A stretch of DNA of 64,000 bases from Asterias rubens (GCF_902459465.1 NW_022985710.1:1-64000), one strand, 5' to 3'; positions 12,863-37,001 are shown, counted from the stretch's first letter. Program-made: numbers and translations. Notes: generated by a model not told the origin, from the letters alone.

Positions 12863-13483
12863 TTACTGATGACCGCAGTTGTCCAGCATGAAGGAGTGAC
12901 ACCGAGGGCGTGATCGGTAATCTTTCCCGCTCGTACCCTGTAGCTCATCCATGGCATGACGGAGCAGACACTGAGGTGTGAGACGGCGGCTGTTGTACAC
13001 GGGGAGCTCACAGACAGCGTGACGGTTCGAGTTGATGCAGTGTTGATCGTCCCATGTACCGTTCATATCAACCAGCATCACTGCACAATCAGCGTTGTTA
13101 GCATTATTCGGTTGCCTTCCAGCCCAATTCTCATAAGCGTTAGTCTCACCCTTCAACGGACAGTGCTGCCAGTTTCCCTCCTCCTCGATGTCATTACAAC
13201 CAATCCAGAGACTGGAAGGTGGCTTCTGATCAAACACTTTCAGGTAAAGTTTCCATATAAAATCCTGTTCGAATCTTGAGTTTGGCACAGCGAGGTTTGC
13301 CTCACTCTGGGCACAAGTGTGATTTGCTTCGAACCAATCTACCCTCTGCATTGCAAACAAGTAACATGACTCGCCGTATCGGTGCCAATCAGGAGGGCAG
13401 ATTTCAGCCAATAGACAACCACAATAAACGACCAAAACAATGCTTAAACGTTGAACTGCAACCATTTTGAATACTTGAAACAA
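12863..13483 (-). CDS. Secreted C-type lectin L1a, single exon, 206 aa, with shortened in-frame PAN/apple remnant
   Basis: Signal-peptide-like N-terminus; CPPDW..YGESCY, WIGCND, QPNN..DC, WDD..C and CE motifs; tail PQCLLRH..RSRPRCHSF. Confidence 0.88.
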   Translation of the reverse strand: MFQVFKMVAVQRLSIVLVVYCGCLLAEICPPDWHRYGESCYLFAMQRVDWFEANHTCAQSEANLAVPNSRFEQDFIWKLYLKVFDQKPPSSLWIGCNDIEEEGNWQHCPLKGETNAYENWAGRQPNNANNADCAVMLVDMNGTWDDQHCINSNRHAVCELPVYNSRRLTPQCLLRHAMDELQGTSGKDYRSRPRCHSFMLDNCGHQ

Positions 13484-14427
13484 TAATGGCCTGAATAGAT
13501 TCTGTTTTACGACTGTACGACGCCTTTTGTTGTAACAACTATCTTTCAGGATATAACGTCCATGTTACCATGGTAACCAAATTGCCAACCACCGTGACAA
13601 AATAATCTGATTATTAAGAAGGTCAAATTCAACGCAGTAGAGCCTTATGGAATGAAGCTCTCGCAAAACAGTGGTATCTTTCATTCCACGGTTTTAAGCT
13701 AATGAATTTCAATTCGTTATATATGGTTGTTTTTACAAGTGACTGTTTCCTTTAGTTTCAAAGGGAAACCATCAAGGCGACCGAGAGAGGTTTATCGATC
13801 CAATCCACCCCTAGTGTCTGGCAGCAATTAATATCTATACAAAACTGTACAGCTGCAATTAGCTGGATTCTCCTCTGGTCTGCAAGACCTTCAAAAGATG
13901 CGCTGCAATTAAGACACGTAGGAATATTGCATAGTACTGAGAAGAGCGAGATGGAAGAGGAGTAGAGAGAAGAAGAATACACCAGAGAACAATAGAGTGG
14001 CGAACAATAGAGCGACGAACACTAGACCTTCTTTTGTGACACTGGTTTGGTTTATGTTTGTTGGAATGGAAACCATTACGTGTTAATGAGACATAATGGG
14101 GGAAGGGGTCAAACAGTACGTCAGTCTCTACATCCAAAGAGATTTTGTATTCAGTTTTGCTTATTTTTTAGTTTACGAATTCTTTATAAAGAGCACTTAT
14201 ACCTCATACTTCACATTATAAGGAGAATAGTACACAATATTCGACTACAAGAAACGACTCTTGGCTTCAACTGTAATCTTTTCACAAATTCGATTTTTTT
14301 TTAAGTGTTAAACTTAATTGAGACAAATAAAAAACTAGACTTATACAGGATGTCAGATTTTGACTCTTTTGTAAAACTGGTAAACTAAGATATATCTTCT
14401 CAATTCATCTCAACATTGTGCGTTTGT

Positions 14428-14657
14428 AAACTGCTCACAAAAAGTAAGGAAACTTTTTTCAATCCAGTATATTTGTTATTATTTAATACTCTCTTTGTAT
14501 ATGGTATATATCAATGCAAAGCTGAACTGTTCCTTTTTAAAATGATACCATATTTGCAATGATTACATGTTGCTGAACTTGGCTACACGAATAACAATGA
14601 GGCAAAGTCACAAATCAAATGTGCCAAAATTACCGTTGTCTGTGAATGGTCAATAGG
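14428..14657. mobile_element. Solo left TIR of Tc1-like element (remainder deleted in block A)
   Basis: Matches 26925-27150; the sequence then jumps to the equivalent of block-B position ~29700 via an AGG microhomology. Confidence 0.8.
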
Positions 14658-15108
14658 GATTCATCAAAATCTTGTCACAAACACGGCAAATGTGAATACT
14701 GCTGTATCCTCGTTATTGAAAAGAGTGCCGTAAGTGTTCCTATTGACACATCGGTTTTTATTGATCTCTGTTGGAATGGAACCCTGGCAAAATGGCTGCA
14801 TCGGGGTATTTTTCATAGCAATCTAATTTTTTTTAATTTCTCGGTCGGCAATCACTTATCCTCCCTGAAGAAATAGCGTACGAGAGGCGGGTTTGAAATG
14901 GCTCAGTTATAAGAAGCAAAGATAAATGCTCAAAGGAGGGTGCAATTGGAGAAAAAAAACCCATATGAAAGCAAATTAACATCTTATGATTTGAATATAC
15001 TGGACAAATATTGTTGTTACATCTAGAGTGTAGTTCTGGGTGACGTCACCGCAATAAGTTTTTCAAACATTAACATTTATGCGTTACTTAAATTCATCAT
15101 TTTACATA

Positions 15109-15217
15109 TGTTGCACGCTGTGACGGGGTCCATGGCGTTTTGTACAACCGAGGGGGAAAGTGCCATTTCCCCTCGAGGGTGTACAAAACCCAGGGACCCC
15201 AGTCACAGCGTGCAACA
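15109..15217. repeat. ~110-bp imperfect palindrome (fold-back element core); second copy at 30148-30266
   Basis: tgttgcacgctgtgac.ggggtccatgg.gttttgtaca...tgtacaaaac.cc.gggacccc.gtcacagcgtgcaaca. Confidence 0.85.
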
Positions 15218-16201
15218 ATTGTTTTGTTATACCTTTGTTTAATTGTTATTCCTCTTCTCTAAGTTATGTTGTCATCTTCAAACATTATTACGACAGACTA
15301 TTCATTGTTTAATGAGCAGACGAACAAGAAACAATTCCCTCGAACCCGCGGTTGTTTCGTACACAGCGCTGGAAATCGACCAACGCCGGGAACGATCAAG
15401 GTGATGTACACCGGTGTACATCACTTTTCATGTTACCCGACCCGTCGAGCCATGTAACATGCGTTTTTGTTGCGCATCACATGATTGGTTCTCGACCAAT
15501 CAAACTTTGCACAGAGGTATAACAATGAAAAATGGCTCAGACATTTTGTTATTTCTAAATCTCTGACATGATTATTTAGGTTGACCCTTTCACGTTCTAT
15601 TAGTTTCTGTGGGCAACCAAATAATGCACTGAATACCGAAGAACGTCATCATAGACGGACAAATGCTGCATGTCTATGTACTAAAGCATGATAGCGATAA
15701 TTTTTGGAAATCGGCACCAGCAGACTGACCGGGTTGAAATACCGTTTCATAAGAACCAATCTATGTCATCTGGTAATCAGTCAATCCATAAAAAAATAAA
15801 AATAAAAAAAAAACTTATTACTACTTGTACACTTCATCTTATGTTCCTTGGATTTGAGATAATAAACAAATATGACGCAGATTCAAACATTATTACAGAC
15901 TAATCGCCGTTTTAATCAACTTTAAATTCTAAAGAGTTAAATCACTATCGAATAAATTTGTTTTTAAGAAAGAATGTAGGATTCTTTTAGAACAAAAAGA
16001 ACCGTGATGTTAAAAATACGTCAAACTTAGTTTTGTTAAAAGATCTTTTTCCAAAAAGAGTCGTTAAAATTGATAATTTTGTTTTACAGAGATGGTGAAA
16101 ATATTCGTGCTCGTGTCATCTCTGAGATGTTAACTTATTACTTGCTCCTGTGTGCATTATGGCTTGTCATTTGGTTTTTTATTTGCGCAATATTGTGTTA
16201 A

Positions 16202-16581
16202 ACACACTGGACACTATTGGTAACTGTCAAAGACCAGTCTTTCTCACATGGTGTATCGCAACATTTATGCATAAAATAACAAATCTGTGAAAACTTGTGC
16301 TCAATTGGTCGTCAAAGTTGCGAGATAATTATTAAAGAAAAAGACACCACTGTCACACGAATTTGTGTGCTTTCATGGTGCTTGATTTCGAGACCTCAAA
16401 TTCTAAACTTGAGGTCTCGAAATAAATTTCGTGGACAATTTCTTCTGTCTCGAAAACTACATCACTTCAGAGGGAGCCGTTTCTCATGTTTTATACCATC
16501 AACCTCTCCCCATTACTCATTACCAAGTAGGGTTGTATGCTAATACTTATTTTGAGTAATTACCAATAGTGTCCACTGCCA
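16202..16581. mobile_element. MITE family 1 copy (truncated counterpart at ~31245-31457)
   Basis: TTAA flanks; GGACACTATTGGTAA / TACCAATAGTGTCCACTGCC termini. Confidence 0.85.
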
Positions 16582-16637
16582 TTAAACGACTTCATCATTT
16601 AGTTCAAACATACAATCTTTTAAGTAAATGAGTTTAA

Positions 16638-16994
16638 AGGATTTGGGTACTTTTTCAAAATGTCCATAGATTTACATTAAACTTACAGTGTTTGAAGATA
16701 ATGTTAGTGGAAAGCTACCCTTAAAATATTACTTACTGTGGGGTGCTGTAGTTTTTGAGAAATGAGTAAAACAATGCCATGAAAATACATTTGTAAATGA
16801 TTACAATAATTTTCGTCTCATGAGACGAAAATGATTTTCATGACATTGTTTTACTCATTTCAAAAAAACTACAGCACCGTCCTCAGCACGTAATATTTTC
16901 AGGTAAGCTTTCTTCTATCATTATCTTCAAACTGTGTAAGTTTAGTGTAAATCTGTGAACATTTTTTTTTTCCTACAAAAGTTACATTGACCCT
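16638..16994. mobile_element. TTAA-flanked MITE, third family (AGGATTTGGGTAC end); fragments also near 31458-31680 and 52000-52200
   Basis: TTAA-AGG...CCCT-TTAA with internal inverted symmetry (aaacttacagt..tgaagataat / attatcttcaaactgtgtaagttt). Confidence 0.7.
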
Positions 16995-17534
16995 TTAAAG
17001 CTGTCTTCACACCAACTACAATTCACAATAATATTGATATTATTTGTAATCACACACAGTCACAACAAAGCGGGTTGATTAAAACACGATTGAATTAATA
17101 CGAAAAGTGATCTACAGTGATCTGTGGTACGTGGTTCTTAACATTTACCTTAACGTCAACTTATCTAAACGGATGAGAATACCTCCATTATTGTAACTAA
17201 TGAAGATCCTTTCAAAAGGGTGTAATACATAACAAGTTAATATAAGAACATTTTACTCTTATGCCGCGCTGCCGACATTGTCTCTTGTGTTGCAGGGAGA
17301 CATTGCAAAATGTAAAGGTAGTGATCAAAAAGATTGCAGAGAAAATGATGAGGACAGCAAATATCTAAATTCTAGTTTGATTATTAAAAAACAAAAAAAA
17401 CAATTGGCTTTGAAATAAGAAGAAATCTAAATACAATTAATCAGTGCGTAATGTTCAGAGTCCAAATAATAACGGTACATTGGAGTCTTTTTTCTTCTTC
17501 TGCGTTTAGATATAATGTAACAATATTAGGTTAA

Positions 17535-17916
17535 AGGCAGCGGACACTACTGGTAATTACTCAAAATAATTGTTAGCATAAATACCTCACTTGGTAATGA
17601 GTAATGGGGAGAGGTTGATGGTATAAAACATTGTGAGAAACAGCTCCCCCTGAAGTAATGTAGTTTTCGAGAAAGAAGTAGTTATCCACGAATTTGATTT
17701 CGAGACCTCAGATTTAGAAATTGAGGTCTCGAAATCAAGCATCTGAAAGCACACAACTTCGTGTGACAAGGTTTTTTTTCTTTCATTATTATCTCGCAAC
17801 TTCGGCGACCTATTGAGCTCAAATGTTCACAAGTTTGTTATTTTTCTGCATATGTTGAGATACACCTCAACTGTGGAGACCTAATCTTTGACAATTACCA
17901 TGTGTGTCCACTGTCT
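17535..17916. mobile_element. MITE family 1 copy (duplicate at 32217-32588)
   Basis: TTAA-AGGCAGCGGACACTACTGGTAATT...TGTCCACTGTCT-TTAA. Confidence 0.88.
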
Positions 17917-18547
17917 TTAAGGGAGTTATTGACACGCAACATTCCAAATATCATTAAGATTAGTCTTTTTGACTGTCATTGTCTTCGGGTCCTGTAGGTT
18001 TGTTGTTGAACAAGTACCTTGTGTATATCGTTTGTGTTGTTGCTTTTTACTTGCCATCTTTTGTTTAAACTTTTACTGCCATTTTAGAATGTTTAATGTA
18101 TAGTATATAAATGTGTATTTTTTTATGAGCTAGGTCTGGCCGGGAGGGCACGTCTTTTTTGATGACAGTTTTTAGACTTTTGCCCTTCCCTGAACGGCCT
18201 GTGCTTGTTTTATTGTTTTGCTTGTCCGAAGAATAAAAAAAATAAAAATAAAATAACTGAAGAACAAAATAAGCAGTTTGTTTTTCTTACGACTACATTT
18301 TGACGTTGAATTGATTGTGATTGCGGAACTACATTTCAATAGATCGAAGAAGTATCATCTTTCATTGACTTTCATATCACCATCAGTCACTTCTCTGCGA
18401 GTTGCATTGTTCAGCTGGCAAAACATTTTCCCTTCATCTAGCTCCAACAGATTGAAGGAGTGACATCTGGGGTGTGAACGGCAAACCTCCCCGCACGACA
18501 CGACGCTCTTACCCGGTACCTCCTCCATGACGTGGTGCAGCATGTTT

Positions 18548-19069
18548 TTAGTAAAGGAGGCGGCCATCATTGCCGGTCTGCAGGCAGAGTACCCGGTTGT
18601 CGATGACGTGGAGCTCGCAGATAGCAAAGCCCTTTCTATCGCATTCCACATCGCTCCATTGACCATTATTTTTCATGTATTGGTTGCCACAATCTTCATT
18701 TCCCGCGTTATTTGGTTCTCCATATTTCCAGTTCTTATAAGCGTTAGTCTCACCCTTCAACGGACAGTGCTGCCAGTTTCCCTCCTCCTCGATGTCATTA
18801 CAACCAATCCAGAGAAAGGTGTCTGCTGTCGGATTAAACTCTGCAAGGAATAGTTCCCATATGTAATCCTGTTCGGATTGTAAGTCTGGGACGAACAGGT
18901 TTGCTCTTGACTTGGCACAAGTGCGATTTGCTTGGTACCAATCCATGTTGTCCTTTATCATGAGGTAACATGACTTGCCAAATCTGTGCCAATCAGAAGG
19001 GCAGATCTCGGCCACAAGTCGGCAAGTCCAAACACTGAGAAGGAAAACTATGACATGGAAAAGATTCAT
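18548..19069 (-). CDS. Secreted C-type lectin L2a, 173 aa from MNLFHV, EPN-type; PAN domain downstream in a shifted frame (18355-18543)
   Basis: Signal peptide, CPSDW..SCY, WIGCND, EPNNAGNEDC, WSD.EC and CE motifs. Stop TAA at 18548-50 precedes an out-of-frame PAN segment HHV..SCGEVC..RCHSFN..CQLNN. Confidence 0.88.
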   Translation of the reverse strand: MNLFHVIVFLLSVWTCRLVAEICPSDWHRFGKSCYLMIKDNMDWYQANRTCAKSRANLFVPDLQSEQDYIWELFLAEFNPTADTFLWIGCNDIEEEGNWQHCPLKGETNAYKNWKYGEPNNAGNEDCGNQYMKNNGQWSDVECDRKGFAICELHVIDNRVLCLQTGNDGRLLY

Positions 19070-19647
19070 TCTCTTTGAAGTAAAGTCGAGTTTGTTTCGA
19101 TCAGTCGTCTTCAAGCAAGGTCTGTTTGAATATACTGCAAGCAACACCTTCTCCTCATATTAACCTGACGGCTCGAGTGAAAAACGTACAATACTTATTT
19201 ATGGTTACTATAGCAATTACTAGCAATCGTTGTATATCCACTTAATAACCAAGGCTATATACATGTACTTAACGTTTTAAATATGCATCATAATGCCTAT
19301 TAGCTAAATGGATATGGAGTCTAGCTCGGACATAATGCCAATGAGGTTTATTGCAGCGGAAACGCCTTGTTGTAACCGTCATGCTCTGTCGGGAAAGGTT
19401 CACAGTTGGAAAACGTGTACAAAGCCAATAACCCTTTTGAGATTGGCAATGCTACAACACTACTAAGTGTGGGTACATTGTGTGTTTACACCCAAACAAA
19501 ACAAGTAAACACCCAGAGTAAGCAAGTCCGCCAAAACTCAAACAGGCTCATGTGAACCGTTGCAAAAATATTATAAACAATAGGAGGGTCCACGACGACG
19601 GTAGCAGCGGTTACACACGCGTTCATTGCCAGGTTGAGGCGTATATA

Positions 19648-20759: not shown

Positions 20760-21320
20760 TAGTTGTTACCGAGTACCCTGACGTTATATTTGAGAAACAT
20801 ACTTATTCGCACGTATAGAGTTAGAATAGTGTGTCAGACATATGCAGATAGAGAGCCCGTTTGATCCCATTTCACCAACAGATGTTTTGTCACGAGTATT
20901 TTTAAATGTTAGTCTGATGTGCTACAGCGTCGTGGTTTTCATGGGTAATTGGCGATTCGTTCACTTATTTTTGATCCGCATATTAAAGTAAAGTATGGAG
21001 AACAGATTGTTCTAAAGGTTGCAGTTGAGTGATTGCAAGTTTATCTAATGTTTTTGTTAATCCACTAAAATTATTACCCATTGCATCCAACATGACGTTG
21101 TGTAGCAGTTACTGAGTGCCTAATAACATAAGTTTTTGTACTTATTCTACAAACTGGGGAAGCGTTTAAATTGTCCTCCAGTTCTCCAGCATCTTAAGAA
21201 TAAATCGCAATGTTTTAATCGGCAAACCGTCAACCTTGTTCAAGCAGATTTTACAGTGTTTTGTCGGGATATTAACAGCCAGCCTTCCTGCACGGCGGAA
21301 CGCCTTTACCCGGTAACTCC

Positions 21321-21869
21321 TTAATGACGCGGTGAAGAATGCTCCGGGGAAACAAGGCGGCCGTCTTTGCCGGTCTGAAGGCAGAATTTCGGGGTGTTGC
21401 TGACAGTTGTCTCACAAACTGCGTAGCGTTCTGCATTGCACGGGTAATCATCCCATTTACCATTCCTAGCAACCCAAAGCGATCAACAATCTGCTTCATA
21501 GTTGTTATTATTAGGTTCCTCTTCAGCCCAATTCTCATAGGCGTTGGTCTCACCCTTCAACGGACAGTGCTGCCAATTTCCCTCCTCCTCGATGTCATTA
21601 CAACCAATCCAGAGACTAGCGTCTGGTGTCTGATCAAACCCTTTCAGGAATAGTTCCCATATGTAATCCTGTTCGGATTTTGAGTTTGGGATGAGCAGGT
21701 TTCCTCGTGACTTGGCACAAGTGCGATTTGCGTGGTACCAATCCATCTTGTCCTTTATAATGAAGTAACATGACTCGCCGTTTCGGTGCCAGTCAAGAGG
21801 GCAGATTTTGGCCAGTAGACGGCCACAGTGAACGACAAGAACGAGACTCAACACTTGACCTATACGCAT
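21321..21869 (-). pseudogene. C-type lectin L3a with in-frame TGA at 21483-85 (DC*SLW, probably from GGA)
   Basis: Reading through the TGA gives SLWVARNGKWDDYPCNAERYAVCE..CLQTGKDGRLVSPEHSSPRH*, collinear with the paralogs. Confidence 0.85.
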
Positions 21870-22055
21870 TTTGTAATTTTCTCAATTTTAGGAAATTATA
21901 GAGTTAGCTTTTTCCTAACCGTATAGTCGATGCCTGACGATGATGGACTAAAATGGCTGCCTGCTTTGGTTCTTCCCAGAGGATTGTAGTATCTTATAAT
22001 GGTAGTGCGTCAGTGTTTCCATGGAAACAGCTTATAGAAAACCACCAAGTCTTAA

Positions 22056-22449
22056 AGACACTGGAAACTATTGGTAATTGTGAAAGACCAGGCTTCCCTA
22101 CCCGTGCATCTCCACAATGCATAAAATAATTGGTAATTTAAAGACTAGTCTTTACAGTTGGTGTATCTCAACATATCCATAAAATAACAAACCTGTGAAA
22201 ATTTGATATCAATTGGTCGTCGAAGTTGCGAGATAATAATGGAAAAAACACCCTTTTGCACAAGTTTTGTGCTTTCAGATGCTCGAATTCGAGACCTCAA
22301 AATCGAATTCTGAGGTCTCGAAATCAAATTCGTGAAAAACTACTTATTTGTCGAAAACTACGTCATTTCAACAGCTTCCCATTACTCGTTACAAAGTAAG
22401 GTTTTATGCTAGGAATTACTTTGAGTAATTACCAATAGTGTCAGTGCCT
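22056..22449. mobile_element. MITE family 1 copy (duplicate at 37188-37582)
   Basis: TTAA flanks, family termini and internal hairpin present. Confidence 0.85.
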
Positions 22450-24097: not shown

Positions 24098-24499
24098 TTA
24101 TGGTGTCTGGGTTTAATTTCCTTAATCCCCAACACATTCCAATACTCCTTGCATAATTTCACTACTGGGTAGACTTTTTGAAAGTGGACTACTCAACTGG
24201 GGCAAAATATCAAATTAAACGAGCAAATTAACTCTGCATGAAAACAATACAGTCACCTCTTCCCATATTAGTTAACAATCAGCTTTTATCAAATTAACGC
24301 AATATTTCATGCGTGTCGAATAATAAGATAAAGTTTGCACGAAAACATTAACAGTGCCAACATTAAGAGATGATGCGTTTGCGTAACATGGATATGCTGA
24401 CTAGTGTGATTTATATCATTACACATTCTAGGGAAACATACTTACTGAATACATAATAATTTGACATCAAGTTCTTTGTTTATGAATACATTTTCTACA

Positions 24500-24950
24500 A
24501 ACCGGAGAAATACGTGTTTTAATTGTCTCCAAGTTCTCCAGCATCAGCAGCTTCAGAATGAGTCGCGTCGTTCGATTGGACAACCGTCAACCTAGGCATC
24601 AAGTTTTTGTCTTTTACTTAATCTTCTATATACAAACCGGAGAAGTTTTAGTTTCAATTGTCTTCCAGGGCTCCCGCAGCAGCTTCAGAATGAGTCGCGT
24701 TGTTTTTATTGGCAAACCGTCAACTTTGTTCCAGCAGATCAACAGTGTGACGTCGGGGTGTAACCAGCCAGCCTTTCCGCATGACGGAACGCTCTTATAA
24801 CCGGTAGCTCCCTAATGACGTGGTGAAGAATGCTCCGGGGAAACAAGGCGGCCGTCTTTGCCGGTCTGAAGGCAGAACTTTTTTTTTGACAGGTTGTTCG
24901 CAAATTGCGTAGATAAGTAGCCACTACTGCACCAATAATCATCCCTTTAA
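24500..24950 (-). pseudogene. 3' remnant of C-type lectin L4 (end of CTLD plus decayed PAN, partly duplicated)
   Basis: Contains GATGATTATTGG..TGCGAACAACCTG and CLQTGKDGRLVSP coding sequence, plus an NNATHSEAA-like PAN end; the 5' part is missing at the block A/B junction. Confidence 0.75.
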
Positions 24951-25432: not shown

Positions 25433-26053
25433 TTACTGATGACCGCAGTTGTCCAGCATGAAGGAGTGACACCGAGGGCGTGATCGGTAATCCTTCCCGC
25501 TCGTACCCTGTAGCTCATCCATGGCATGACGGAGCAGACACTGAGGTGTGAGACGGCGGCTGTTGTACACGGGGAGCTCACAGACAGCGTGAAGGTTCAA
25601 GTTGATGCAGTGTTGATCGTCCCATGTACCGTTCATATCAACCCGCATCACTGCACAATCAGCGTTGTTAGCATTATTCGGTTGCCTTCCAGCCCAATTC
25701 TCATAAGCGTTAGTCTCACCCTTCAACGGACAGTGCTGCCAGTTTCCCTCCTCCTCGATGTCATTACAACCAATCCAGAGACTGGAAGGTGGCTTCTGAT
25801 CAAACACTTTCAGGTAGAGTTTCCATATAAAATCCTGTTCGAATCTTGAGGTTGGCACAGCGAGGTTTGCCTCACTCTGGGCACAAGTGTGATTTGCTTC
25901 GAACCAATCTACCCTCAGCATTGCAAACAAGTAACATGACTCGCCGTATCGGTGCCAATCAGGAGGGCAGATTTCAGCCAATAGACAACCACAATAAACG
26001 ACCAAAACAATGCTTAAACGTTGAACTGCAACCATTTTGAATACTTGAAACAA
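25433..26053 (-). CDS. Secreted C-type lectin L1b, 206 aa (duplicate of L1a)
   Basis: 7 nt differences from L1a counted by eye (5 replacement, 2 silent); ORF intact. Confidence 0.88.
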   Translation of the reverse strand: MFQVFKMVAVQRLSIVLVVYCGCLLAEICPPDWHRYGESCYLFAMLRVDWFEANHTCAQSEANLAVPTSRFEQDFIWKLYLKVFDQKPPSSLWIGCNDIEEEGNWQHCPLKGETNAYENWAGRQPNNANNADCAVMRVDMNGTWDDQHCINLNLHAVCELPVYNSRRLTPQCLLRHAMDELQGTSGKDYRSRPRCHSFMLDNCGHQ

Positions 26054-26924: not shown

Positions 26925-28011
26925 AACTGCTCACAAAAAGTAAGGAAACTTTTTTCAATCCAGTATATTTGTTATTATTTAATACTCTCTTTGTATATGG
27001 TATATATCAATGCAAAGCTGAACTGTTCCTTTTTAAAATGATACCATATTTGCAATGATTACATGTTGCTGAACTTGGCTACACGAATAACAATGAGGCA
27101 AAGTCACAAATCAAATGTGCCAAAATTACCGTTGTCTGTGAATGGTCAATAGGTAATGCTCAATAATCGAATCGATCAAGCTTTTCAGAACCATTAATGG
27201 TTTACACAATGATTTGCATCAGTGAGCTCATCGGACACAATTAACCCTCATCTAACGAAAAACACCTTGTTTGATGGGTATTTGCAAAACGATATTCTAC
27301 AGCCGAATGCAGTCCCATACTTGCAGACTCTTGGACCAAATGCCATCTTTCAAGATGACAACGCTCGCCCCAATCGAGCCCGACTGGTTACTGACTACCT
27401 GAAAAATGTTGGGGTGAACCGGATGGATTGGCCTGCTAACAGTCCAGACCTGAATCCCATGGAACATCTGTGGGACCAGTTTGGCGTTCCATTCTTTATT
27501 AAGGAACCTGGTTAGGTCAGCCACAGTTGATGTGTTGGTGGTTCTAGCGCGATCCCTCATCATCAGCGCATCACAAGACCTGTGTGCAGCATGAGAAGAA
27601 GGTGCCAGGATGTCATCAACGCCTTCGGATCATCCACTTGTTACTGAACTTGTTGTATCAATAAAGTGTATTAAGATCAGTAAGTTGTCTTGCTCTATAC
27701 CAAACTTCTTGTCCCAATAAAGTGGATTAAGATCAGTATGTTGCCTTGCTTGTTTGAATTACAGTGTCAATTTGATTGTTCACACAGTAACAGTAACACA
27801 AAATTTCTAATTTTGGCACATTTGATTTGTGACTGTGTCTCGTTCTCATTAACGTGGTCAAGTCCAGCAACATGCAATCATTGCAACTGTGGTATCATTT
27901 TAAAGAGGAACAGTTCAGCTTTGCATTGATATATACCATATACAAAGAGAGTAATAAATAATAACAAATATACTGGATTGAAAAAATTTTCCTTACTTTT
28001 TGTGAGCAGTT
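26925..28011 (+). mobile_element. Internally deleted Tc1-like transposon, ~230-bp TIRs, TA TSD, transposase C-terminal fragment
   Basis: TA-aactgctcacaaaaagtaagg...ccttactttttgtgagcagtt-TA. ORF 27222-27515 has FQDDNARP and WPANSPDLNPMEHLW; a downstream frame gives MRRRCQDVINA. Confidence 0.92.
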
Positions 28012-28019
28012 TATATAGG

Positions 28020-28190
28020 ATTTGAGGCATTGCATGGTGAGGTATCAATGTATATTTGGTTTGCGGTAACACCATGTGTGTATCTACTTGCCAGATAGAG
28101 TTGTTCTTAGGGAACTGTCTTGCTTTATTCTACTGCCGTGGAGTAGATAATCGGAGGTTCGGGAGACTTCTCAGTTTGATTTCCCAGGGC
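28020..28190 (-). mobile_element. Possible Penelope-like retroelement terminal fragment
   Basis: Recognised only by resemblance to remembered repeat sequence (ggtttgcggtaacaccatgt); not verified. Confidence 0.3.
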
Positions 28191-28196
28191 ACTTAA

Positions 28197-28578
28197 AGGC
28201 AGTGGACACTATTGGTAATTAGTCAAAATTTGTAATTAACATAAAACCTTACTTGGTAACGATTATTTGGGAGAGGTTGATAGTATAAAACATTGTGAGA
28301 AACGGCTCCCTCTGAAGTGACATAGTTTTCGAAAAAGAAGTAATTTTTCACGAATTTGATTTTGAGACCTCAAGTTTAGAATTTGAGGTCTCGAAATCAA
28401 GCATCTGATGAAAGCACACAACTTCGTGTGACAAGGTTGTTTTTTCTTTCATTATTATCTTGCAACTTTGACGACCGATTGAGCTCAAATTTTTACAAGT
28501 TTGTTATTGTATGCATATGTTGAGATACACAAAGTGAGAAGACTGGTCTTTGACAGTTACCAATTGTGTCCAGTGTCT
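28197..28578. mobile_element. MITE family 1, near-consensus copy
   Basis: TTAA-AGGCAGTGGACACTATTGGTAATT...TTACCAATTGTGTCCAGTGTCT-TTAA. Confidence 0.9.
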
Positions 28579-28944
28579 TTAAGTTTTTTTGTATACACGC
28601 ATTAGAACAACGTTACTTATTTGGTAACTTGTTTATCGTGAAAGAATAAAACAAATGTTTAAATAGTACAGCCTGAAGTTGTTGTCGTTTTAAGTTTGCG
28701 CACTTTTCCAGTCTCCTTCCCGTGCTGCTGTGGTGGTGGCTCGCAGCTCAAATAAGTACGATTAAATAATTAAACCTGTATGTCTAAGTCCTGAATATTG
28801 AAATGTTCTACATGTGTACAGACAGTTTTAACCCTTTGTTCACTATAAGACTAAGCATGGTACCTGGTATATTATTTACAGCAACTATCATTATTCGGTG
28901 ACATTATTCCGTATAATATGGACAATCATGAATGTCTCGATATC

Positions 28945-29220
28945 AAAGCCGAGTGCACTCGAGTGTAGGTTCGAATCCCAGTCGTGACACTTGTGTCCAT
29001 GGGTGAGCAAGCAATTAATTGTAACATAACTTCTCTCAACCAAGGGGTAACTGGGCACCTGTGAGGGCAGAGATGGTTCTTGTGTTTGGTTAAGCTTATA
29101 GTGCGCTATATTATTTGACAGCACCTGGCGCGAGCTGTATACTCTAAATGGAGCTGAGATGGTTTAAGGAATAAAAAGGCCCTTTGATCAGGGGTAGTTA
29201 TGTTAGAAGCGCTTTGAGTA
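28945..29220 (+). mobile_element. tRNA-derived SINE (degenerate)
   Basis: B-box GGTTCGAATCCC at 28968-79, followed by gtgacacttgtgtcc..gagcaagc core-like sequence and an AAGCGCTTTGAG LINE-like tail. Confidence 0.65.
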
Positions 29221-32200
29221 AAAAAAGCAGCACCGTCGGTAACCATTTGAAGTAGAATACCGCTTGGTCTGCACTGGTCTTGGTTTAATCGTAGTGGCAG
29301 CAAGCAAGATACACTTTACGCAGAAGCAGTGAAGTTGTGAGGAGTCTTCAGTTTTCCAAATAGCTGGATTTCGACGGCGATCTTGTCCCGGCTTGAAAAT
29401 TATTTGAGATCGGGGTTATTGACATGATGTTTTTCTTTTTAGATCGTAGTGCTGTGTGAAGACGATGCGATACATTGTAAACACAGTATAATAGGTAAGA
29501 AATATTGTCATACCAAATATTGCGCGTGAATGACTTATAAGTGTCGTGGCGTCAATCCTGAGACTCATTATATATAGCGCCACCAAGGGTTTTCTCAGGA
29601 GAGGTTATCTTTCCCAAAGTTGTAGAAAGTATCTTTACGTTGAGTGCAAAAGAGTAAAAGTACCAACGACAATACGAATTTTAGCTGAGAACCACAGAAG
29701 GGATTCATCAAAGTCTTGTCACAAACACGGCAAATGTGAATACTGCTGTATCCTCGTTATTGAAAAGAGTGCCGTACGTGTTCCTATTGACACATCGGTT
29801 TTTATTGATCTCTGTTGGAATGGAACCCTGGCAAAATGGCTGCATCGGGGTATTTTTCATAGCAATCGAATTTTTTTTTATTTCTCGGTCGGCAATCACT
29901 TATCCTCCCTGAAGAAATAGTGTACGAGAGGCGGGTTTGAAATGGTTCAGTTATAAGAAGCAAAGATAAATGCTCAAAGGAGGGTGCAATTGGAGAAAAA
30001 AAACCCATATGAAAACAAATTAACATCTTATGATTTGAATATACTGGACAAATATTGTTGTTACATCTAGAGTGTAGTTCTGGGTGACGTCACCGCAATA
30101 AGTTTTTCAAACATTAACATTTATGCGTTACTTAAATTCATCATTTTACAATTGTTGCACGCTGTGACGGGGTCCATGGCGTTTTGTACACCCGAGGGGG
30201 AAAGTGCCATTTCCCCTCGAGGGTGTACAAAACCCATGGACCCCAGTCACAGCGTGCAACAATTGTTTTGTTATACCTTTGTTTAATTGTTATTCCTCTT
30301 CTCTAAGTTCTGTTGTCATCTTCAAACATTATTACGACAGACTATTTATTGTTTAATGAGCAGACGAACAAGAAACAATTCCCTCGAACCCGCGGTTGTC
30401 TCGTACACAGCGCTGGAAATCGGCCAACGCCGGGAACGATCAAGGTGATGTACACCGGTGTACATCACTTTTCATGTTACCCGACCCGTCGAGCCATGTA
30501 ACATGCGTTTTTGTTGCGCATGACATGATTGGTTCTCGACCAATCAAACTTTGCACAGAGGTATAACAATGAAAAATGGCTCAGACATTTTGTTATTTCT
30601 AAATCACTGACATGATTATTTAGGTTGACCCTTTCACGTTCTATTAGTTTCTGTGGGCAACCAAACAATGCACTGAATACCGAAGAACGTCATCATAGAC
30701 GGACAAATGCTGCATGTCTATGTACTAAAGCATGATAGCGATAATTTTTGGAAATCGGCACCAGCAGACTGACCGGGTTGAAATACCGTTTCATAAGAAC
30801 CAATCTATGTCATCTGGTAATCAGTCAATCCATAAAAAAATAAAAATAAAAAAAACCTTATTACTACTTGTACACTTCATCTTATGTTCCTTGGATTTGA
30901 GATAATAAACAAATATGACGCAGATTCAAACATTATTACAGACTAATCGCCGTTTTAATCAACTTTAAATTCTAAAGAGTTAAATCACTATCGAATAAAT
31001 TTGTTTTTAAGAAAGAATGTAGGATTCTTTTAGAACAAAAAGAACCGTGATGTTAAAAAGACGTCAAACTTAGTTTTGTTAAAAGATCTTTTTCCAAAAA
31101 GAGTCGTTAAAGTTGATAATTTTGTTTTACAAAGATGGTGAAAATATTCGTGCTCGTGTCATCTCTGAGATGTTTACTTATTACTTGCTCCTGTGTGCAT
31201 TATGGCTTGTCATTTGTTTTTTTATTTGCGCAATATTGTGTTAAACACACTGGACACTATTGGTAACTGTCAAAGACCAGTCTTCTCACATGGTGTATCG
31301 CAACATTTATGCATAAAATAACAAATCTGTGAAAACTTGTGCTCAATTGGTCGTCAAAGTTGCGAGATAATTATTAAAGAAAAAGACACCATTGTCACAC
31401 GAATTTGTGTGCTTTCATGGTGCTTGATTTCGAGACCTCAAATTCTAAACTTGAGGTCATGAAAATACATTTGTAAATGATTACAATAATTTTCGTCTCA
31501 TGAGACGAAAATGATTTTCATGACATTGTTTTACTCATTTCAAAAAAACTACAGCACCGTCCTCAGCACGTAATATTTTCAGGTAAGCTTTCTTCTATCA
31601 TTATCTTCAAACTGTGTAAGTTTAGTGTAAATCTGTGAACATTTTTTTTTTTTCCTACAAAAGTTACATTGACCCTTTAAAGCTGTCTTCACACCAACTA
31701 CATTTCACAATAAATTTGATATTATTTGTAATCACACACAGTCACAACAAAGCGGGTTGATTAAAACACGATTGAATTAATACGAAAAGTGATCTACAGT
31801 GATCTGTGGTACGTGGTTCTTAACATTTACCTTAACGTCAACTTATCTAATCTGATGAGAATACTTCCATTATTGTAACTAATGACGATCCTTTCAAAAG
31901 GGTGTAATACATAACAAGTTAATATAAGAACATTTTACTCTTATGCCGCGCTGCCGACATTGTCTCTTGTGTTGCAGGGAGACACTGCAAAATGTAAAGG
32001 TAGTGATCAAAAAGATTGCAGAGAAAATGATGAGGACAGCAAATATCTAAATTCTAGTTTGATTACTTAAAAAAAAAAAAAACAATTGGCTTTGAAATAA
32101 GAAGAAATCTAAATACAATTAATCAGTGCGTAATGTTCAGAGTCCAGATAATAACGGTACATTGGAGTCTTTTTTCTTCTTCTGCGTTTAGATATAATGT

Positions 32201-33215
32201 AACAATATTAGGTTAAAGGCAGCGGACACTACTGGTAATTACTCAAAATAATTGTTAGCATAAATACCTCACTTGGTAATGAGTAATGGGGAGAGGTTGA
32301 TGGTATAAAACATTGTGAGAAACAGCTCCCCCTGAAGTAATGTAGTTTTCGAGAAAGAAGTAGTTATCCACGAATTTGATTTCGAGACCTCAGATTTAGA
32401 AATTGAGGTCTCGAAATCAAGCATCTGAAAGCACACAACTTCGTGTGACAAGGTTTTTTTTCTTTCATTATTATCTCGCAACTTCGGCGACCTATTGAGC
32501 TCAAATGTTCACAAGTTTGTTATTTTTCTGCATATGTTGAGATACACCTCAACTGTGGAGACCTAATCTTTGACAATTGTCACTGTCTTTAAGGGAGTTA
32601 TTGACACGCAACATTCCAAATATCATTAAGATTAGTCTTTTTGACTGTCATTGTCTTCGGGTCCTGTAGGTTTGTTGTTGAACAAGTACCTTGTGTATAT
32701 CGTTTGTGTTGTTGCTTTTTACTTGCCATCTTTTGTTTAAACTTTTACTGCCATTTTAGAATGTTTAATGTATAGTATATAAATGTGTATTTTTTTATGA
32801 GCTAGGTCTGGCCGGGAGGGCACGTCTTTTTTGATGACAGTTTTTAGACTTTTGCCCTTCCCTGAACGGCCTGTGCTTGTTTTATTGTTTTGCTTGTCCG
32901 AAGAATAAAAAAAATAAAAATAAAATAACTGAAGAACAAAACAGTTTGTTTTTCTTACGACTACATTTTGACGTTGAATTGATTGTGATTGCGGAACTAC
33001 ATTTCAGTAGATCGAAGAAGTATCATCTTTCATTGACTTTCATATCACCATCAGTCACTTCTCTGCGAGTTGCATTGTTCAGCTGGCAAAACATTTTCCC
33101 TTCATCTAGCTCCAACAGATTGAAGGAGTGACATCTGGGGTGTGAACGGCAAACCTCCCCGCACGACACGACGCTCTTACCCGGTACCTCCTCCATGACG
33201 TGGTGCAGCATGTTT

Positions 33216-33640
33216 TTAGTAAAGGAGGCGGCCATCATTGCCGGTCTGCAGGCAGAGTACCCGGTTGTCGATGACGTGGAGCTCGCAGATAGCAAAGCCC
33301 TTTCTGTCGCATTCCACATCGCTCCATTGACCATTATTTTTCATGTATTGGTTGCCACAATCTTCATTTCCCGCGTTATTTGGTTCTCCATATTTCCAGT
33401 TCTTATAAGCGTTAGTCTCACCCTTCAACGGACAGTGCTGCCAGTTTCCCTCCTCCTCGATGTCATTACAACCAATCCAGAGAAAGGTGTCTGCTGTCGG
33501 ATTAAACTCTGCAAGGAATAGTTCCCATATGTAATCCTGTTCGGATTGTAAGTCTGGGACGAACAGGAAGGGCAGATCTCGGCCACAAGTCGGCAAGTCC
33601 AAACACTGAGAAGGAAAACTATGACATGGAAAAGATTCAT
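33216..33640 (-). pseudogene. C-type lectin L2b, inactivated by a 97-bp frameshifting deletion after ICPS
   Basis: Junction gacgaacagg|aagggcagatc at ~33567 lacks the equivalent of L2a 18900-18996. Confidence 0.88.
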
Positions 33641-34597
33641 TCTCTTTGAAGTAAAGTCGAGTTTGTTTCGATCAGTCGTCTTCAAGCAAGGTCTGTTTGA
33701 ATATACTGCAAGCAACACCTTCTCCTCATATTAACCTGACGGCTCGAGTGAAAAACGTACAATACTTATTTATGGTTACTATAGCAATTACTAGCAATCG
33801 TTGTATATCCACTTAATATCCAAGGCTATATACTTTACGTTTTTTAATATGCATCATAATGCCTATTAGCTAAATGGTTTTGCAGTATTGCTTAAGTCAT
33901 AATGCAAATTAGAGAAAATTCAGCTGAAAGCCTTTGCTGTAACCGTGAGTGGCACCTTCCTAATCATGCTCTGTTGGGTAACGTTGAAACCTAGCGAGTA
34001 CTCGGGCCTTCTGTTTGGTCACCATAATTATTTGAATGCATAGAGTTAGAATAACTTCGGTGTCAGACATCTGCACAGTGCCCGTTTGATTCCATTTCGC
34101 CATTAGGTGTTTTGTCCCAGGTTTATTTAATGTCAGTCTAAAGGTGCTACAGAGTCGTGGTTTTCCTGAATGGCGAGTCGTTCACTTAGTTTTGATCCGA
34201 ATTAAGTTAGAGTATAGAGACCAGATAGTGCCAAGGGTTGAGATTTAGTGGTGACAGTTCATAATGATTGGTTAATCCACTACTACTACAAACGCCCATT
34301 GCGTTACTCAGCAAGACTCCAAAAGCACGAAAAAGCCCTTGCTGCAGTTATTTCACTTTGCATTCTCCAAAGCGTGGTGAGCAGTTTTGCGTAATAAAAT
34401 GACATTCAGTTTTTGTCTTATCAATGTTCTACAAACCGGGGACGAGTTTCAATTGTCTTCGAGTTCTCGATCAGCAACTTCAGAATGAGTTGCTTTGTTT
34501 TAACTTGCCAACCTTGTTCCAGCAGATTAACAGTGTGACGTTGGGGTTTAAGCTGCCAGCCTTCCCTCATGACGGAACGCCCTTACCCGGTAGCTCC

Positions 34598-35125
34598 TTA
34601 TTGACGTGGTGAAGAATGCTCCGGGAAACAAGGCGGCCGTCTTTGCCGGTCTGGAGGCAGAATATCCGGGTGTTGCTGATTGTTTTTTTCGCAAATTGCG
34701 TAGCAGCCACTATAACTGCACTGATAATCATCCCATTTACCATGATTAGTATACCACATCACTCCACAGTCTGCCCCATCCATGGCCCCATTGGGTTTTC
34801 CATCCGCCAAGTTCTAATGGGCGTTGGTTTCACCCTTCAACGGACAGTGCTGCCAGTTTTCCTCCTCCTCGATGTCATTAGAACCAAACCTGGTGTCTGA
34901 ACAAACTCTTTCAGGAATTGTTCCCATATGTTATCCTGTTCGGGTTGTGAGTTTGGGATGAGCAGGTTTGCTCGTGACTCGGCACAAGTGCGATTTGCTT
35001 TGTACTTTGTACCAATCCATCTTGTCCTTTATAATGAAGTAACATGAATCGCCGTATCGGTGCCAATCACGAGGGCAGATCTCGGCCACCAGTCGGCAAC
35101 ACCAAACACTAAGAATGAGAACCAT
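34598..35125 (-). pseudogene. C-type lectin L5 (block B only), frameshifted; KPN motif
   Basis: MVLILSVWCCRLVAEICPRDW..SCY; 7-bp tandem duplication gtacaaa; deletion before GxND; GKPNGAMDGADC..WDDYQC. Confidence 0.8.
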
Positions 35126-36473
35126 CAAAGGAAAAGGATTGAAAGAATTTAATTCTCTTTGAAGTAGTGTCGGGTTATTTTGGATCAGTCGTCTTACAGC
35201 AAAGTCGGTTTGAATATTTACTGCAAGCAACACAACCTTAATTCTTTTATAGTTGCCTGACAATCCAATAGAAACGATATAAAATCTTAAGCCACGATTC
35301 CTCCGCATTTGATGACAAATTTGTTTAAAAACCCGCATGAAATATCCAAGGCTATAACACTTAATTTTAAATATCCATCAATACACCTATTAGCTAAATG
35401 GATATGGAGTCTAGCTCGGACATAATGTCAATGAGGTTTATTGCAGCGGAAACGCCTTGTTGTAACCGTCATGCTCTGTCGGGAAAGGTTCACAGTTGGA
35501 AAACGTGTACAAAGCCAATAACCCTTTTGAGATTGGCAATGCTACAACACTACTTAGTGTGGGTACATTGTGTGTTTACACCCAAACAAAACAAGTAAAC
35601 ACCCAGAGTTAGCAAGTCCGCCAAAACTCAAAAAGCCTCATGTGAACCGTTGCAAAAATATTATAAACAATAGGAGGGTCCACGACGACGGTAGCAGCGG
35701 TTACACACGCGTCCATTGCCACGTTGAGACGTATATAGTTGTTACCGAGTACCCTGACGTTATATTTGAGAAACATACTTATTCGGACGTATAGAGTTAG
35801 AATAGTGTGTCAGACATCTGCATAGAGCCCGTTTGATCACATTACACCAACAGATGTTTTGTCACGAGTATTTTTAAATGTTAGTCTGATGTGCTACAGC
35901 GTCGTGGTTTTCATGGGTAATTGGCGATTCGTCTACTTATTTTTGATCCGCATACTAAAGTAAAGTATGGCGAACAGATTGTTCTAAAGGTTGCAGTTGA
36001 GTGATTGCAAGTTTATCTTATGTTTTTGTTAATCCACTAACATTGTTACCCAATGCATCCTACATGACGTTGTGGAGCAGTTACTGAGTGCCTACAACAT
36101 AAGTTTTTGTCCTTATTCTACAAACTGGGGAAGCGTTTAAATTGTCCACCAGTTCTCCAACAGCATCTTCAGAATAAATCGCAATGTTTCAATCGGCAAA
36201 CCGTCAACCTTGTTCAAGCAGATTTACAGTGTTTTGTTGGGATATTTAAAGCAAGCCTTCCTGCACGGCGGAACGCCCTTACCCGGTAACTCCTTAATGA
36301 CGCGGTGAAGAATGCTCCGGGGAAACAAGGCGGTCGTCCGGTCTGAAGGCAGAATTTTGGGGTGTTGCTGACAGTGATCTCACATAAATTGCGTGGTTGT
36401 TTAAAGGTGTGCTGTCGGGTTGTAACCGGCCAGCCTTTCCGCATGACGGAACGCTCTTATAACCGGTAACTTC

Positions 36474-37001
36474 CTAATGACGTGGTGAAGAATGCTCCGG
36501 GGAAACAAGGCGGCCGTCTTTGCCGGTCTGAAGGCAGAACTTCTGGGTGTTTCTGACAGGTTGTTCGCAAATTGCGTAGTAGAGGCCACTGCACAAATAA
36601 TCATCCCATTTACCATGTTTATCTGACCACAACGCTCCACATTCTCCCCCTTCGGGTTGTCCATCAGCCCAGTTCTCATAGGCGTTGGGTTCGCCCTTCA
36701 ACGGACAGTGCTGCCAGTTTCCCTCCTCATTACAACCAATCCAGAGACTGGCGTCTGGTATCTGATCAAACTCTTTCAGCACCAGTTCCCATATGTAATC
36801 CTGTTCGGATTTTGAATTTGGGATGAGCAGGTTTGCTCTTGACTCGACACAAGTGCTCCTTGCTTTGTACCAATCCATCTTGTCCTTTATGATGAAGTAA
36901 CATGACTCGCCGTTTCGGTGCCAGTCAAGAGGGCAGATTTTGGCCAGTAGACGGCCACAGTTAACTACAAGAACGAGACTCAACACTTGACCTATACGCA
37001 T
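36474..37001 (-). CDS. Secreted C-type lectin L3b, 175 aa, QPE motif, open ORF, chimeric 3' half
   Basis: Signal peptide, CPLDW..SCY, WIGCN (DI deleted), GQPEGGEC, WDDYLC and CE motifs. Confidence 0.82.
   Translation of the reverse strand: MRIGQVLSLVLVVNCGRLLAKICPLDWHRNGESCYFIIKDKMDWYKARSTCVESRANLLIPNSKSEQDYIWELVLKEFDQIPDASLWIGCNEEGNWQHCPLKGEPNAYENWADGQPEGGECGALWSDKHGKWDDYLCSGLYYAICEQPVRNTQKFCLQTGKDGRLVSPEHSSPRH

What the first reader, a model, noticed from the sequence alone, without database searches (positions are those of the whole stretch)
12863..37001. Lectin clade that shed its PAN/apple domain through one shared +1 frameshift
Seen: in L1a/b the CTLD runs in frame into the PAN remnant through a 12-nt linker (CTC ACA CCT CAG TGT CTG). 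In L2a/b (CTC CTTTACTAAAAAC ATG), and in L3a, L3b, L4 and L5 (CTT GTTTCCCCGGAGC ATT), the linker is 13 nt, with the extra base in a T run and the first PAN Cys replaced. The PAN coding sequence is then out of frame and decays to different degrees. Inference: a single ancestral insertion converted a CTLD-PAN protein into a CTLD-only secreted lectin, which then expanded. This would be domain-architecture evolution caught in progress.
Basis: partly seen in the sequence, partly recalled or inferred. Interest (0 to 1): 0.7.

Follow-up and report, generated by a model that had tools for sequence, protein, structure and literature searches.

The report
Sea-star lectins losing their PAN domain
In a starfish tandem array of secreted sugar-binding lectin genes, a real one-base insertion, shared with a sister species, cut off the second (PAN) domain in one expanding lineage; a neighbouring gene seems to have lost it separately and later, which makes this a tidy but ordinary case of gene-family evolution.

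Summary
The window is an Asterias (common starfish) tandem array of intronless C-type-lectin (CTLD) genes on the minus strand. Its relatives elsewhere in the genome encode CTLD plus a C-terminal PAN domain.

**Observation: confirmed.** L1a/b have a 12-nt linker, L2a/b a 13-nt linker and four L3-type copies a 13-nt linker, so PAN lies in the +1 frame.
- The shift is not an assembly error. Contigs from four other runs cross the linkers without gaps.
- The syntenic A. amurensis array and a third assembly carry 13-nt linkers too, some without a homopolymer run.

**Interpretation: half right.**
- The L3-type copies form one clade (100/100). Their CTLD is under purifying selection (omega 0.62) and their ex-PAN is neutral (omega 1.08). 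This is a true CTLD-only lineage that predates the rubens/amurensis split and then expanded.
- L2 does not share that history. Its junction and PAN group with an intact in-frame paralogue (99/99), and its CTLD groups with an in-frame cluster (100/99).
- AU tests reject L2+L3 as one clade (p 0.014-0.033). L2's shift is probably younger and separate.
- Other relatives truncated PAN by stops, so PAN loss is recurrent.
- Five of the nine window copies are broken or fragments.

Expression was not tested.

The parts
12863..13465 (-). L1a: intact 200-aa gene. It has a signal peptide, a CTLD and a short in-frame, truncated PAN remnant. The 12-nt linker lies within 12965-12982.
   Evidence: ORF; Pfam Lectin_C 58 bits with no PAN hit; motif; the frame-0 stop falls at reference codon 217; a 200-aa orthologue sits in the A. 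amurensis array.
18548..19069 (-). L2a: intact 173-aa CTLD-only ORF that ends ...GRLLY-stop. The 13-nt linker lies within 18541-18559.
   Evidence: It is near-identical to database protein P0025.
18340..18552 (-). L2a PAN remnant in the +1 frame. It is open for 65 codons and then hits TGA (18355-18357) at the codon of the last, invariant Cys.
   Evidence: tblastn gives 79% identity to the PAN of P0015; PAN_1 21.0 bits; invariant columns from alignment A1.
21321..21869 (-). L3a: L3-type CTLD-only gene with an in-frame TGA at 21483-21485 in this assembly, so it is a pseudogene allele here. The 13-nt linker is at 21341-21353 and a decayed PAN remnant lies downstream.
   Evidence: An intact 182-aa version, P0013, exists in other samples.
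24650..24950 (-). 5'-truncated L3-type fragment holding the end of a CTLD, the 13-nt linker (24832-24844) and a PAN remnant.
25433..26035 (-). L1b: intact 200-aa duplicate of L1a (97% identical at protein level). The 12-nt linker lies within 25535-25552.
   Evidence: It matches P0001.
33008..33718 (-). L2b: duplicate of L2a with a deletion of about 96 nt inside the CTLD that breaks the frame, so it is a pseudogene. The 13-nt linker lies within 33209-33227 and the PAN remnant is at 33008-33220.
   Evidence: The NCBI model P0044 splices around the damage. Contigs of 4 runs cross the linker without gaps.
34298..35122 (-). L3-type pseudogene with 3 stops in the CTLD whose linker is back to 12 nt (GTTTCCCGGAGC, 34618-34629). 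Its 3' half (34289-34800) is absent in two other runs.
   Evidence: It is nested inside a 13-nt clade at 98/91. The 512-bp skip appears in runs X1 and X20.
36135..36384 (-). L3-type fragment holding a CTLD tail, the 13-nt linker (36314-36326) and a PAN remnant. It is fused behind L3b by a local duplication of about 180 bp.
36474..37001 (-). L3b: intact 175-aa L3-type CTLD-only ORF that ends ...GRLVSPEHSSPRH-stop. The 13-nt linker is at 36494-36506.
   Evidence: A 1240-nt contig of run X1 crosses both linkers without gaps. The nearest relative is A. amurensis L071:15k.

Best explanation
The region is a birth-and-death tandem array of intronless, secreted C-type lectin genes in a sea star (Asterias). 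The ancestral architecture is signal peptide, CTLD and PAN/apple. Within one subfamily the PAN domain has been lost or truncated repeatedly and by different mutations.

**Two of those losses sit at the same short CTLD-PAN linker.**
- An old +1 insertion created the L3-type lineage. Its members are CTLD-only lectins with a short new tail (VSPEHSSPRH). They then multiplied, stayed under purifying selection on the CTLD, and let the PAN remnant decay neutrally.
- A younger +1 change occurred in L2 shortly before the A. rubens / A. amurensis split. L2 is a mosaic gene whose junction and PAN derive from a lineage that is still in frame (C4:13815698). Its PAN reading frame is therefore still almost open.

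The TTTCCC(C) run in the linker looks slip-prone, because one L3-type pseudogene has since lost a base again.

**Status of each step.**
- Shown: the sequence states, the cross-species sharing, the tree topologies and the selection contrast.
- Inferred: secretion, lectin function, independence of the L2 event, and the slippage mechanism.
For: **Family and architecture.**
- CTLD plus PAN_1 score above the Pfam cut-off in intact paralogues.
- 15 of about 43 examined A. rubens copies read through to the native PAN stop, all with a 12-nt linker.
- Other copies are cut by stops at reference codons 215-228 or by other frameshifts.

**The shift is real and old.**
- The syntenic A. amurensis array lies downstream of a UDPGT gene, as in the window.
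- It holds six L3-type copies and an L2 orthologue, all with 13 nt. Non-homopolymer variants such as GTTTCTCCGGAGC occur among them.
- A third assembly has the same tail.
- Contigs from four runs show no indel at the linkers.

**L3 is a single event.**
- L3 is a 100/100 clade.
- The 12-nt copy is nested within it.

**Selection**.
- L3 CTLD omega 0.62 (2dlnL 14.65); L3 ex-PAN omega 1.08 (2dlnL 0.2).
- In-frame clade PAN omega 0.56 (2dlnL 10.6).

**L2 is separate.**
- L2 plus the in-frame C4:13815698 copy group at 99/99.
- The L2 CTLD groups with the in-frame C7 cluster at 100/99.
- AU tests reject L2+L3 at p 0.014, 0.033 and 0.030.
- L2 PAN is 90-97% identical to the in-frame copy.
- Polarised changes in L2 PAN are 2 non-synonymous to 5 synonymous before the species split and 10 to 5 after it.
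Against: - The A. amurensis L2 linker CTTTCCCCAAAAC shares TTTCCCC with L3. L2, L3 and the in-frame C4 copy alone share the TTT, so the three linkers may have one ancestry. A clade of L2+L3+C4 copy is not rejected on PAN (p 0.33).
- The AU p-values are only moderate, and mosaic evolution makes any tree of this family unreliable.
- Pairwise dN/dS values are noisy, and the 2:5 against 10:5 contrast is not significant.
- An omega of 0.62 is weak constraint.
- No RNA or protein evidence was obtained, because all runs laid were contigs.
- In the window only L1a, L1b, L2a and L3b have intact ORFs.
Confidence: 0.6

Rival explanations
1. One +1 insertion in the common ancestor of L2 and L3 made a CTLD-only lectin. 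The conflict with the trees comes from later gene conversion of L2's flanks, or from the in-frame C4:13815698 gene having reverted by a -1 change.
For: - The extra base sits at the same alignment column in L2 and L3, and the A. amurensis L2 linker shares TTTCCCC with L3.
- L2, L3 and the C4 copy share TTT and the loss of the linker Cys codon.
- The clade L2+L3+C4 copy is not rejected on PAN (p 0.33).
- A -1 reversal does occur in this run.
Against: - AU tests reject L2+L3 on both flanks.
- L2 resembles the in-frame C4 copy immediately on both sides of the 13 nt. One conversion tract would therefore have repaired the frame, and two tracts ending at the linker are contrived.
- A reversion needs a currently intact PAN to have survived an out-of-frame period.
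- L2's PAN is far less decayed than L3's.
Confidence: 0.2
2. The frameshifted copies are simply pseudogenes. No functional CTLD-only lectin exists, and the apparent clade is dead DNA copied by segmental duplication.
For: - L3a has a nonsense codon, L2b has a deletion, the 34.5-kb copy has 3 stops, and two copies are fragments.
- Blocks 12392-19379 and 24955-33946 are 96-98.6% identical.
- No expression evidence was obtained.
Against: - The L3 CTLD omega of 0.62 is significantly below 1, while the adjacent ex-PAN is at 1.08.
- Five of six L3-type copies in A. amurensis have intact 175-182-aa ORFs, as do L3b and C4:12956674 in A. rubens.
- An intact L3a allele (P0013) and intact L2 (P0025) occur in other samples.
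Confidence: 0.13
3. PAN is still made from L2 (or L3), through a cryptic intron, transcriptional slippage or programmed +1 ribosomal frameshifting at the linker, so no domain has been shed.
For: - The A. amurensis L2 PAN frame is open over all 71 codons to the native stop.
- The A. rubens linker reads CUU-U, which resembles known +1 shift sites. That resemblance is from my own knowledge and was not tested.
Against: - The linker and the position of the frame-0 stop differ between the two species.
- A. rubens L2 PAN has a TGA at an invariant Cys codon, and both orthologues changed nearly invariant or invariant residues (Lys to Glu, Ala to Val).
- L2 PAN dN since the species split (0.066) equals the synonymous rate of the CTLD (0.061).
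- L3 remnants are full of stops.
- No joint spans any linker in the contigs.
- 13 nt cannot hold an intron.
Confidence: 0.04
4. The 13-nt linkers are homopolymer errors of the assembly.
For: The extra base lies in or beside T, C or A runs, and the scaffold is unplaced.
Against: - The same 13-nt state appears in independent copies, in two other assemblies and in four other runs.
- Several variants have no four-base run.
Confidence: 0.02

Closest known systems
Echinoderm small secreted C-type lectins, annotated by NCBI as echinoidin-like or perlucin-like in Asterias rubens and A. amurensis
   Same: - They share a signal peptide plus a single CTLD (Pfam PF00059).
- They are intronless and sit in large tandem families.
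- The best database hits to the window copies carry these names.
   Different: Most relatives here carry an extra C-terminal PAN domain. The copies in the window are derivatives that truncated it (L1) or threw it out of frame (L2, L3). No paper on this CTLD-PAN architecture was found.
PAN/apple domain proteins (Pfam PF00024 PAN_1)
   Same: The C-terminal module of intact paralogues, about 70 aa, passes the PAN_1 cut-off and has the conserved Cys pattern.
   Different: - The match is weak (25-26 bits).
- A structure prediction of the module alone was of low confidence (pLDDT 54), so the fold was not confirmed.
- The L1 tail gives no hit, and the L2 remnant is just under the threshold.
Birth-and-death evolution of tandem immune-type gene families, with domain loss through frameshift or premature stop (general concept, from my own knowledge)
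   Same: The array shows tandem duplication, mosaic paralogues and frequent pseudogenes. A C-terminal domain was removed by a single small mutation, and its remnant then decayed neutrally.
   Different: Two losses map to the same 13-nt linker and one copy shows a back-slip. The event can be dated against a sister species.
CTLD-PAN lectin array elsewhere in this genome (earlier scan note s1-175465)
   Same: It is the same family and shows mosaic paralogues shared with a related species. It was judged ordinary multigene-family evolution.
   Different: That array keeps PAN. This one documents its loss.

Membership tests
C-type lectin-like domain (Pfam PF00059) | Profile match above the curated cut-off (22.6 bits) | tested here: met
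   L1a scores 58.4 bits, L2a 53.8, L3b 52.8 and the L3a N-terminal part 41.2. P0020 scores 72 and P0025 54.3.
C-type lectin-like domain (Pfam PF00059) | Calcium-dependent sugar binding | not testable with these tools
   Only EPN- or QPN-like and WxD motifs can be read in the translations. There is no assay.
PAN/apple domain (Pfam PF00024) | Profile match above the cut-off (21.4 bits) in intact family members | tested here: met
   P0015 scores 26.2, P0024 24.8 and P0041 24.9. P0019 scores 21.0, just under the cut-off.
PAN/apple domain (Pfam PF00024) | Profile match in the window's own remnants | tested here: inconclusive
   The L2a +1-frame ORF scores 21.0 bits against 21.4. The L1a tail gives no hit. 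The L3 remnants give only short tblastn matches.
PAN/apple domain (Pfam PF00024) | Apple fold with its disulfide pattern | tested here: inconclusive
   The AlphaFold model of the module has mean pLDDT 54.3 and was not good enough to search with. Six Cys columns are invariant or nearly so.
Programmed +1 ribosomal frameshift gene | Shift site and stop context conserved between species, with the downstream frame under purifying selection | tested here: not met
   The linkers differ (CTTTACTAAAAAC against CTTTCCCCAAAAC), and the frame-0 stops are 2 against 16 codons downstream. There is a TGA in the A. rubens PAN. L2 PAN changed 10 non-synonymous to 5 synonymous since the species split.
Functional CTLD-only lectin lineage (L3-type) | Purifying selection on the CTLD but not on the ex-PAN | tested here: met
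   Omega is 0.62 (2dlnL 14.65) for the CTLD against 1.08 (2dlnL 0.2) for the ex-PAN.
Functional CTLD-only lectin lineage (L3-type) | Transcribed and secreted | not tested
   Only contigs were available. No run on record as RNA held the stretch.

The most novel reading that the evidence does not exclude
The CTLD-PAN linker may be a slip-prone switch. Changes of +1 or -1 at its TTTCCC(C) run have moved PAN out of or into frame at least three separate times: +1 in L3, +1 in L2, and -1 in the 34.6-kb copy. A gene such as L2, whose PAN frame is still open, could then regain or co-express the two-domain form by genomic, transcriptional or ribosomal slippage. That would make the domain architecture reversible rather than simply lost.
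Probability: 0.08. Interest if true: 0.6.

Novelty: new member of a known kind. Interest (0 to 1): 0.33.

Why it matters
This is a clean, datable example of how one small mutation removes a whole domain from a secreted immune-type lectin. The shortened gene is then kept and multiplied.
- The dead remnant lies next to the live part as an internal neutral control.
- A sister species fixes the timing.
- PAN was also lost by other routes in the same subfamily, which suggests the domain is dispensable there. That is a useful hint for anyone studying what PAN adds to these lectins.

It does not reveal a new mechanism. Domain loss by frameshift, mosaic paralogues and pseudogene turnover are standard in tandem families.

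Tried and rejected
1. **Structure of the PAN module.** An AlphaFold run on a 12-sequence alignment gave pLDDT 54, so no fold search was run.
2. **Pairwise Nei-Gojobori dN/dS** was too noisy to decide anything. It was replaced by codon-model fits. A first attempt at these timed out.
3. **Expression.** The two run searches found no holder on record as RNA. All four runs laid were Logan contigs, so expression, transcript ends and splicing could not be read. Run X20, guessed to be RNA, also covers intergenic DNA.
4. **The 12-nt linker at 34618-34629.** It could not be positively confirmed. Listed contigs of X2 and X5 end exactly at the G run, and X1 and X20 lack the segment.
5. **Outgroup L2 orthologue.** A protein search with L2 (P0025) for an in-frame L2 orthologue in other species found none above 66% identity outside Asterias.
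6. **A 216-aa gene call in A. amurensis (L070:18392-19085).** No GT..AG removal could reproduce it. It is left unexplained.
7. **Literature.** Searches for CTLD-PAN lectins in echinoderms and for the third assembly's accession gave nothing relevant.
8. **Splice acceptor idea.** I considered that TTCTGCCTTCAG before the linker might be a splice acceptor. It is coding (FCLQ) and conserved in all in-frame single-exon copies, so I dropped the idea.
Full report
**What the region is**

The window is contig C40:1-64000 of a 417.6-Mb genome. The best protein matches are Asterias rubens and A. amurensis 'echinoidin-like' and 'perlucin-like' C-type lectins, and earlier notes of this scan name the genome as A. 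rubens.

Between 12.8 and 37.0 kb, all on the minus strand, lie nine copies or fragments of an intronless gene. It encodes a signal peptide and a C-type lectin-like domain (Pfam Lectin_C, 41-58 bits).

The genome holds at least 150 matches to this family. Many read 245-260 aa without interruption. These intact members carry a C-terminal PAN_1 domain above Pfam's cut-off (24.8-26.2 bits against 21.4). The ancestral architecture is therefore CTLD-PAN.

**The observation**

I aligned about 50 copies from this genome, A. amurensis and a third assembly.
- Every copy that reads in frame has 12 nt between the Leu codon and the (C/A)TG codon.
- L2a/b and the L3-type copies have 13 nt, so PAN falls in the +1 frame.
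- The L2 remnant is still an open frame of 62-65 codons, 79% identical to the PAN of P0015.
- The L3 remnants have stops and further indels.

Four details need correcting.
1. The position of the extra base is ambiguous. A C-run placement gives fewer mismatches than a T-run placement, and the only length variant differs in the C run.
2. The replaced Cys is the second of the module. The first (FCLQTG) is kept in frame 0 by L2 and L3 and is deleted in L1.
3. The in-frame gene at C4:13815698-13816435 also lacks the second Cys.

**Artefact?**

No. The evidence comes from three independent sources.
- *Synteny.* A. amurensis (CP134954.1, 16.50-16.54 Mb) carries the syntenic array downstream of a UDP-glycosyltransferase gene. 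The window has matching UDPGT exons at 42137-42499 and 45260-46207.
- *Sister species and third assembly.* The A. amurensis array holds an L1 orthologue (12 nt), an L2 orthologue (CTTTCCCCAAAAC) and six L3-type copies. All of the latter two kinds have 13 nt. Their variants include GTTTCTCCGGAGC and GTTTCCCTGGAGC, which have no four-base run. A third assembly (GCA_014845345.1) has ATTTTTCCAGAGC and the same kind of new tail.
- *Other runs.* Contigs of four public runs cross the L2b linker without gaps. A 1240-nt contig of run X1 crosses both L3 linkers near 36.3-36.5 kb without gaps. No indel was reported at any linker.

**Is it one event?**

For the L3-type copies, yes.
- They form a 100/100 clade on the PAN segment and on junction plus PAN with the linker columns removed.
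- The 12-nt copy is nested within 13-nt copies (98/91 on the CTLD tree). It is therefore a secondary loss of one base in a dead copy. That copy has three stops, and its 3' half is missing from two other runs.

For L2 plus L3, the data say no.
- On junction plus PAN, L2 of both species is sister to the intact in-frame gene C4:13815698 (99/99).
- On the CTLD, L2 is sister to the in-frame C7:6.59-Mb cluster (100/99).
- AU tests reject a clade of all 13-nt copies: p=0.014 on the CTLD, p=0.033 on PAN and p=0.030 on junction plus PAN. An earlier test without A. amurensis gave 0.017, or 0.087 with the 12-nt copy added.
- The fewest changes of linker state on the tree is three.
- L2 is a mosaic. Its PAN is 90-97% identical to the in-frame C4 copy, while the last third of its CTLD is closest to the C7 type.
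- L2 resembles the C4 copy immediately on both sides of the 13 nt. A single conversion tract would therefore have repaired the frame.
- Polarised substitutions in L2 PAN are 2 non-synonymous to 5 synonymous before the species split and 10 to 5 after it. L2 PAN dN between the two species (0.066) equals the CTLD synonymous rate (0.061). This fits a shift shortly before speciation, but the counts are small.

Against independence:
- The A. amurensis L2 linker shares TTTCCCC with L3.
- L2, L3 and the C4 copy share TTT.
- A clade of the three is not rejected on PAN (p=0.33).

My odds are about 60% for two separate insertions and 20% for one insertion with a reversal or conversion. The remaining 20% is split among the other rivals.

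**Are the CTLD-only genes alive?**

Codon models (GY94, IQ-TREE) give these values.

| Group | Segment | omega | 2dlnL against omega=1 |
|---|---|---|---|
| L3 | CTLD | 0.62 | 14.65 |
| L3, seven intact copies only | CTLD | 0.62 | 9.74 |
| L3 | ex-PAN | 1.08 | 0.20 |
| In-frame clade | PAN | 0.56 | 10.6 |
| In-frame clade | CTLD | 0.47 | 89.5 |

- Five of six L3-type copies in A. amurensis are intact ORFs of 175-182 aa, as are L3b and C4:12956674 in A. rubens.
- Expression was not shown.

**State of the window copies**

| Copy | State |
|---|---|
| L1a, L1b | intact, 200 aa |
| L2a | intact, 173 aa |
| L3b | intact, 175 aa |
| L3a | in-frame TGA at 21483-21485; an intact allele (P0013) occurs in other samples |
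| L2b | lacks about 96 nt of the CTLD |
| 34.5-kb copy | three stops |
| copies with linkers at 24832 and 36314 | fragments |

Much of the copy number comes from a young segmental duplication. Blocks 12392-19379 and 24955-33946 are 96-98.6% identical, and 20760-23848 and 35736-38983 are about 94% identical.

**Wider pattern**

PAN has been shortened many times in the same subfamily.
- The C7 cluster stops at reference codon 222.
- The C5 cluster stops at 225.
- L1 stops at 217.
- Two C4 copies stop at 228.
- Three further copies are frameshifted inside PAN.

The linker frameshifts are thus two of several routes to the same outcome. PAN seems dispensable in this clade.

**Verdict**

This is a well-resolved but mechanistically ordinary example of domain loss in a birth-and-death lectin family. 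No paper describing it was found.

Noticed in passing
window 1-7718: A satellite array of 16.4 tandem copies of a 469-bp unit (96% matches). It runs off the start of the window and directly flanks the lectin array.
   Followed up: partly
window 42137-42499 and 45260-46207 (minus strand): Exons of a UDP-glycosyltransferase gene, with a signature-like ...HGGSNG...FGDQ... motif, lie upstream of the lectin array. An assembly gap (N) at 42542-42692 sits inside the gene. The same UDPGT-then-lectins order is seen in A. amurensis (L071).
   Followed up: partly
window 27153-29699, ORF 27222-27515: An insertion of about 2.5 kb is present in duplicate block B and absent from block A. It carries a Tc1/mariner-like transposase remnant (...DDNARPN...NSPDLNPMEHLWD...). 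A repeat of about 390 bp also recurs in both orientations at 16198-16585, 17531-17920, 28193-28582, 32213-32577 and 63160-63565.
   Followed up: no
window 34289-34800: Contigs of runs X1 and X20 skip these 512 bp, which points to a structural polymorphism that removes the 3' half of the 12-nt-linker pseudogene. Runs X1 and X2 also skip 35165-35371.
   Followed up: partly
window 33008-33718 and 36255-36400: The NCBI gene model P0044 (183 aa) joins a piece of the 36.3-kb fragment to the damaged L2b across an intron of about 2.7 kb. It is probably a chimeric model built around a pseudogene.
   Followed up: no
window 33077, 33091, 33108, 33187: Four single-base differences in the L2 PAN remnant are seen in runs X1 and X20 against both L2a and L2b of the assembly. 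The two assembly copies are therefore closer to each other than to alleles in other individuals.
   Followed up: partly
L014:2435-2609 and L013:2423-2548 (C4:13.79-13.80 Mb): In two truncated paralogues, a further PAN-like piece lies about 450 nt downstream of the CTLD in another frame. This suggests an insertion into, or a split of, the PAN region.
   Followed up: no
L070:18392-19085 (A. amurensis): A gene call of 216 aa lies over an L3-type copy whose frame-0 ORF is 182 aa. No GT..AG removal reproduces it.
   Followed up: partly
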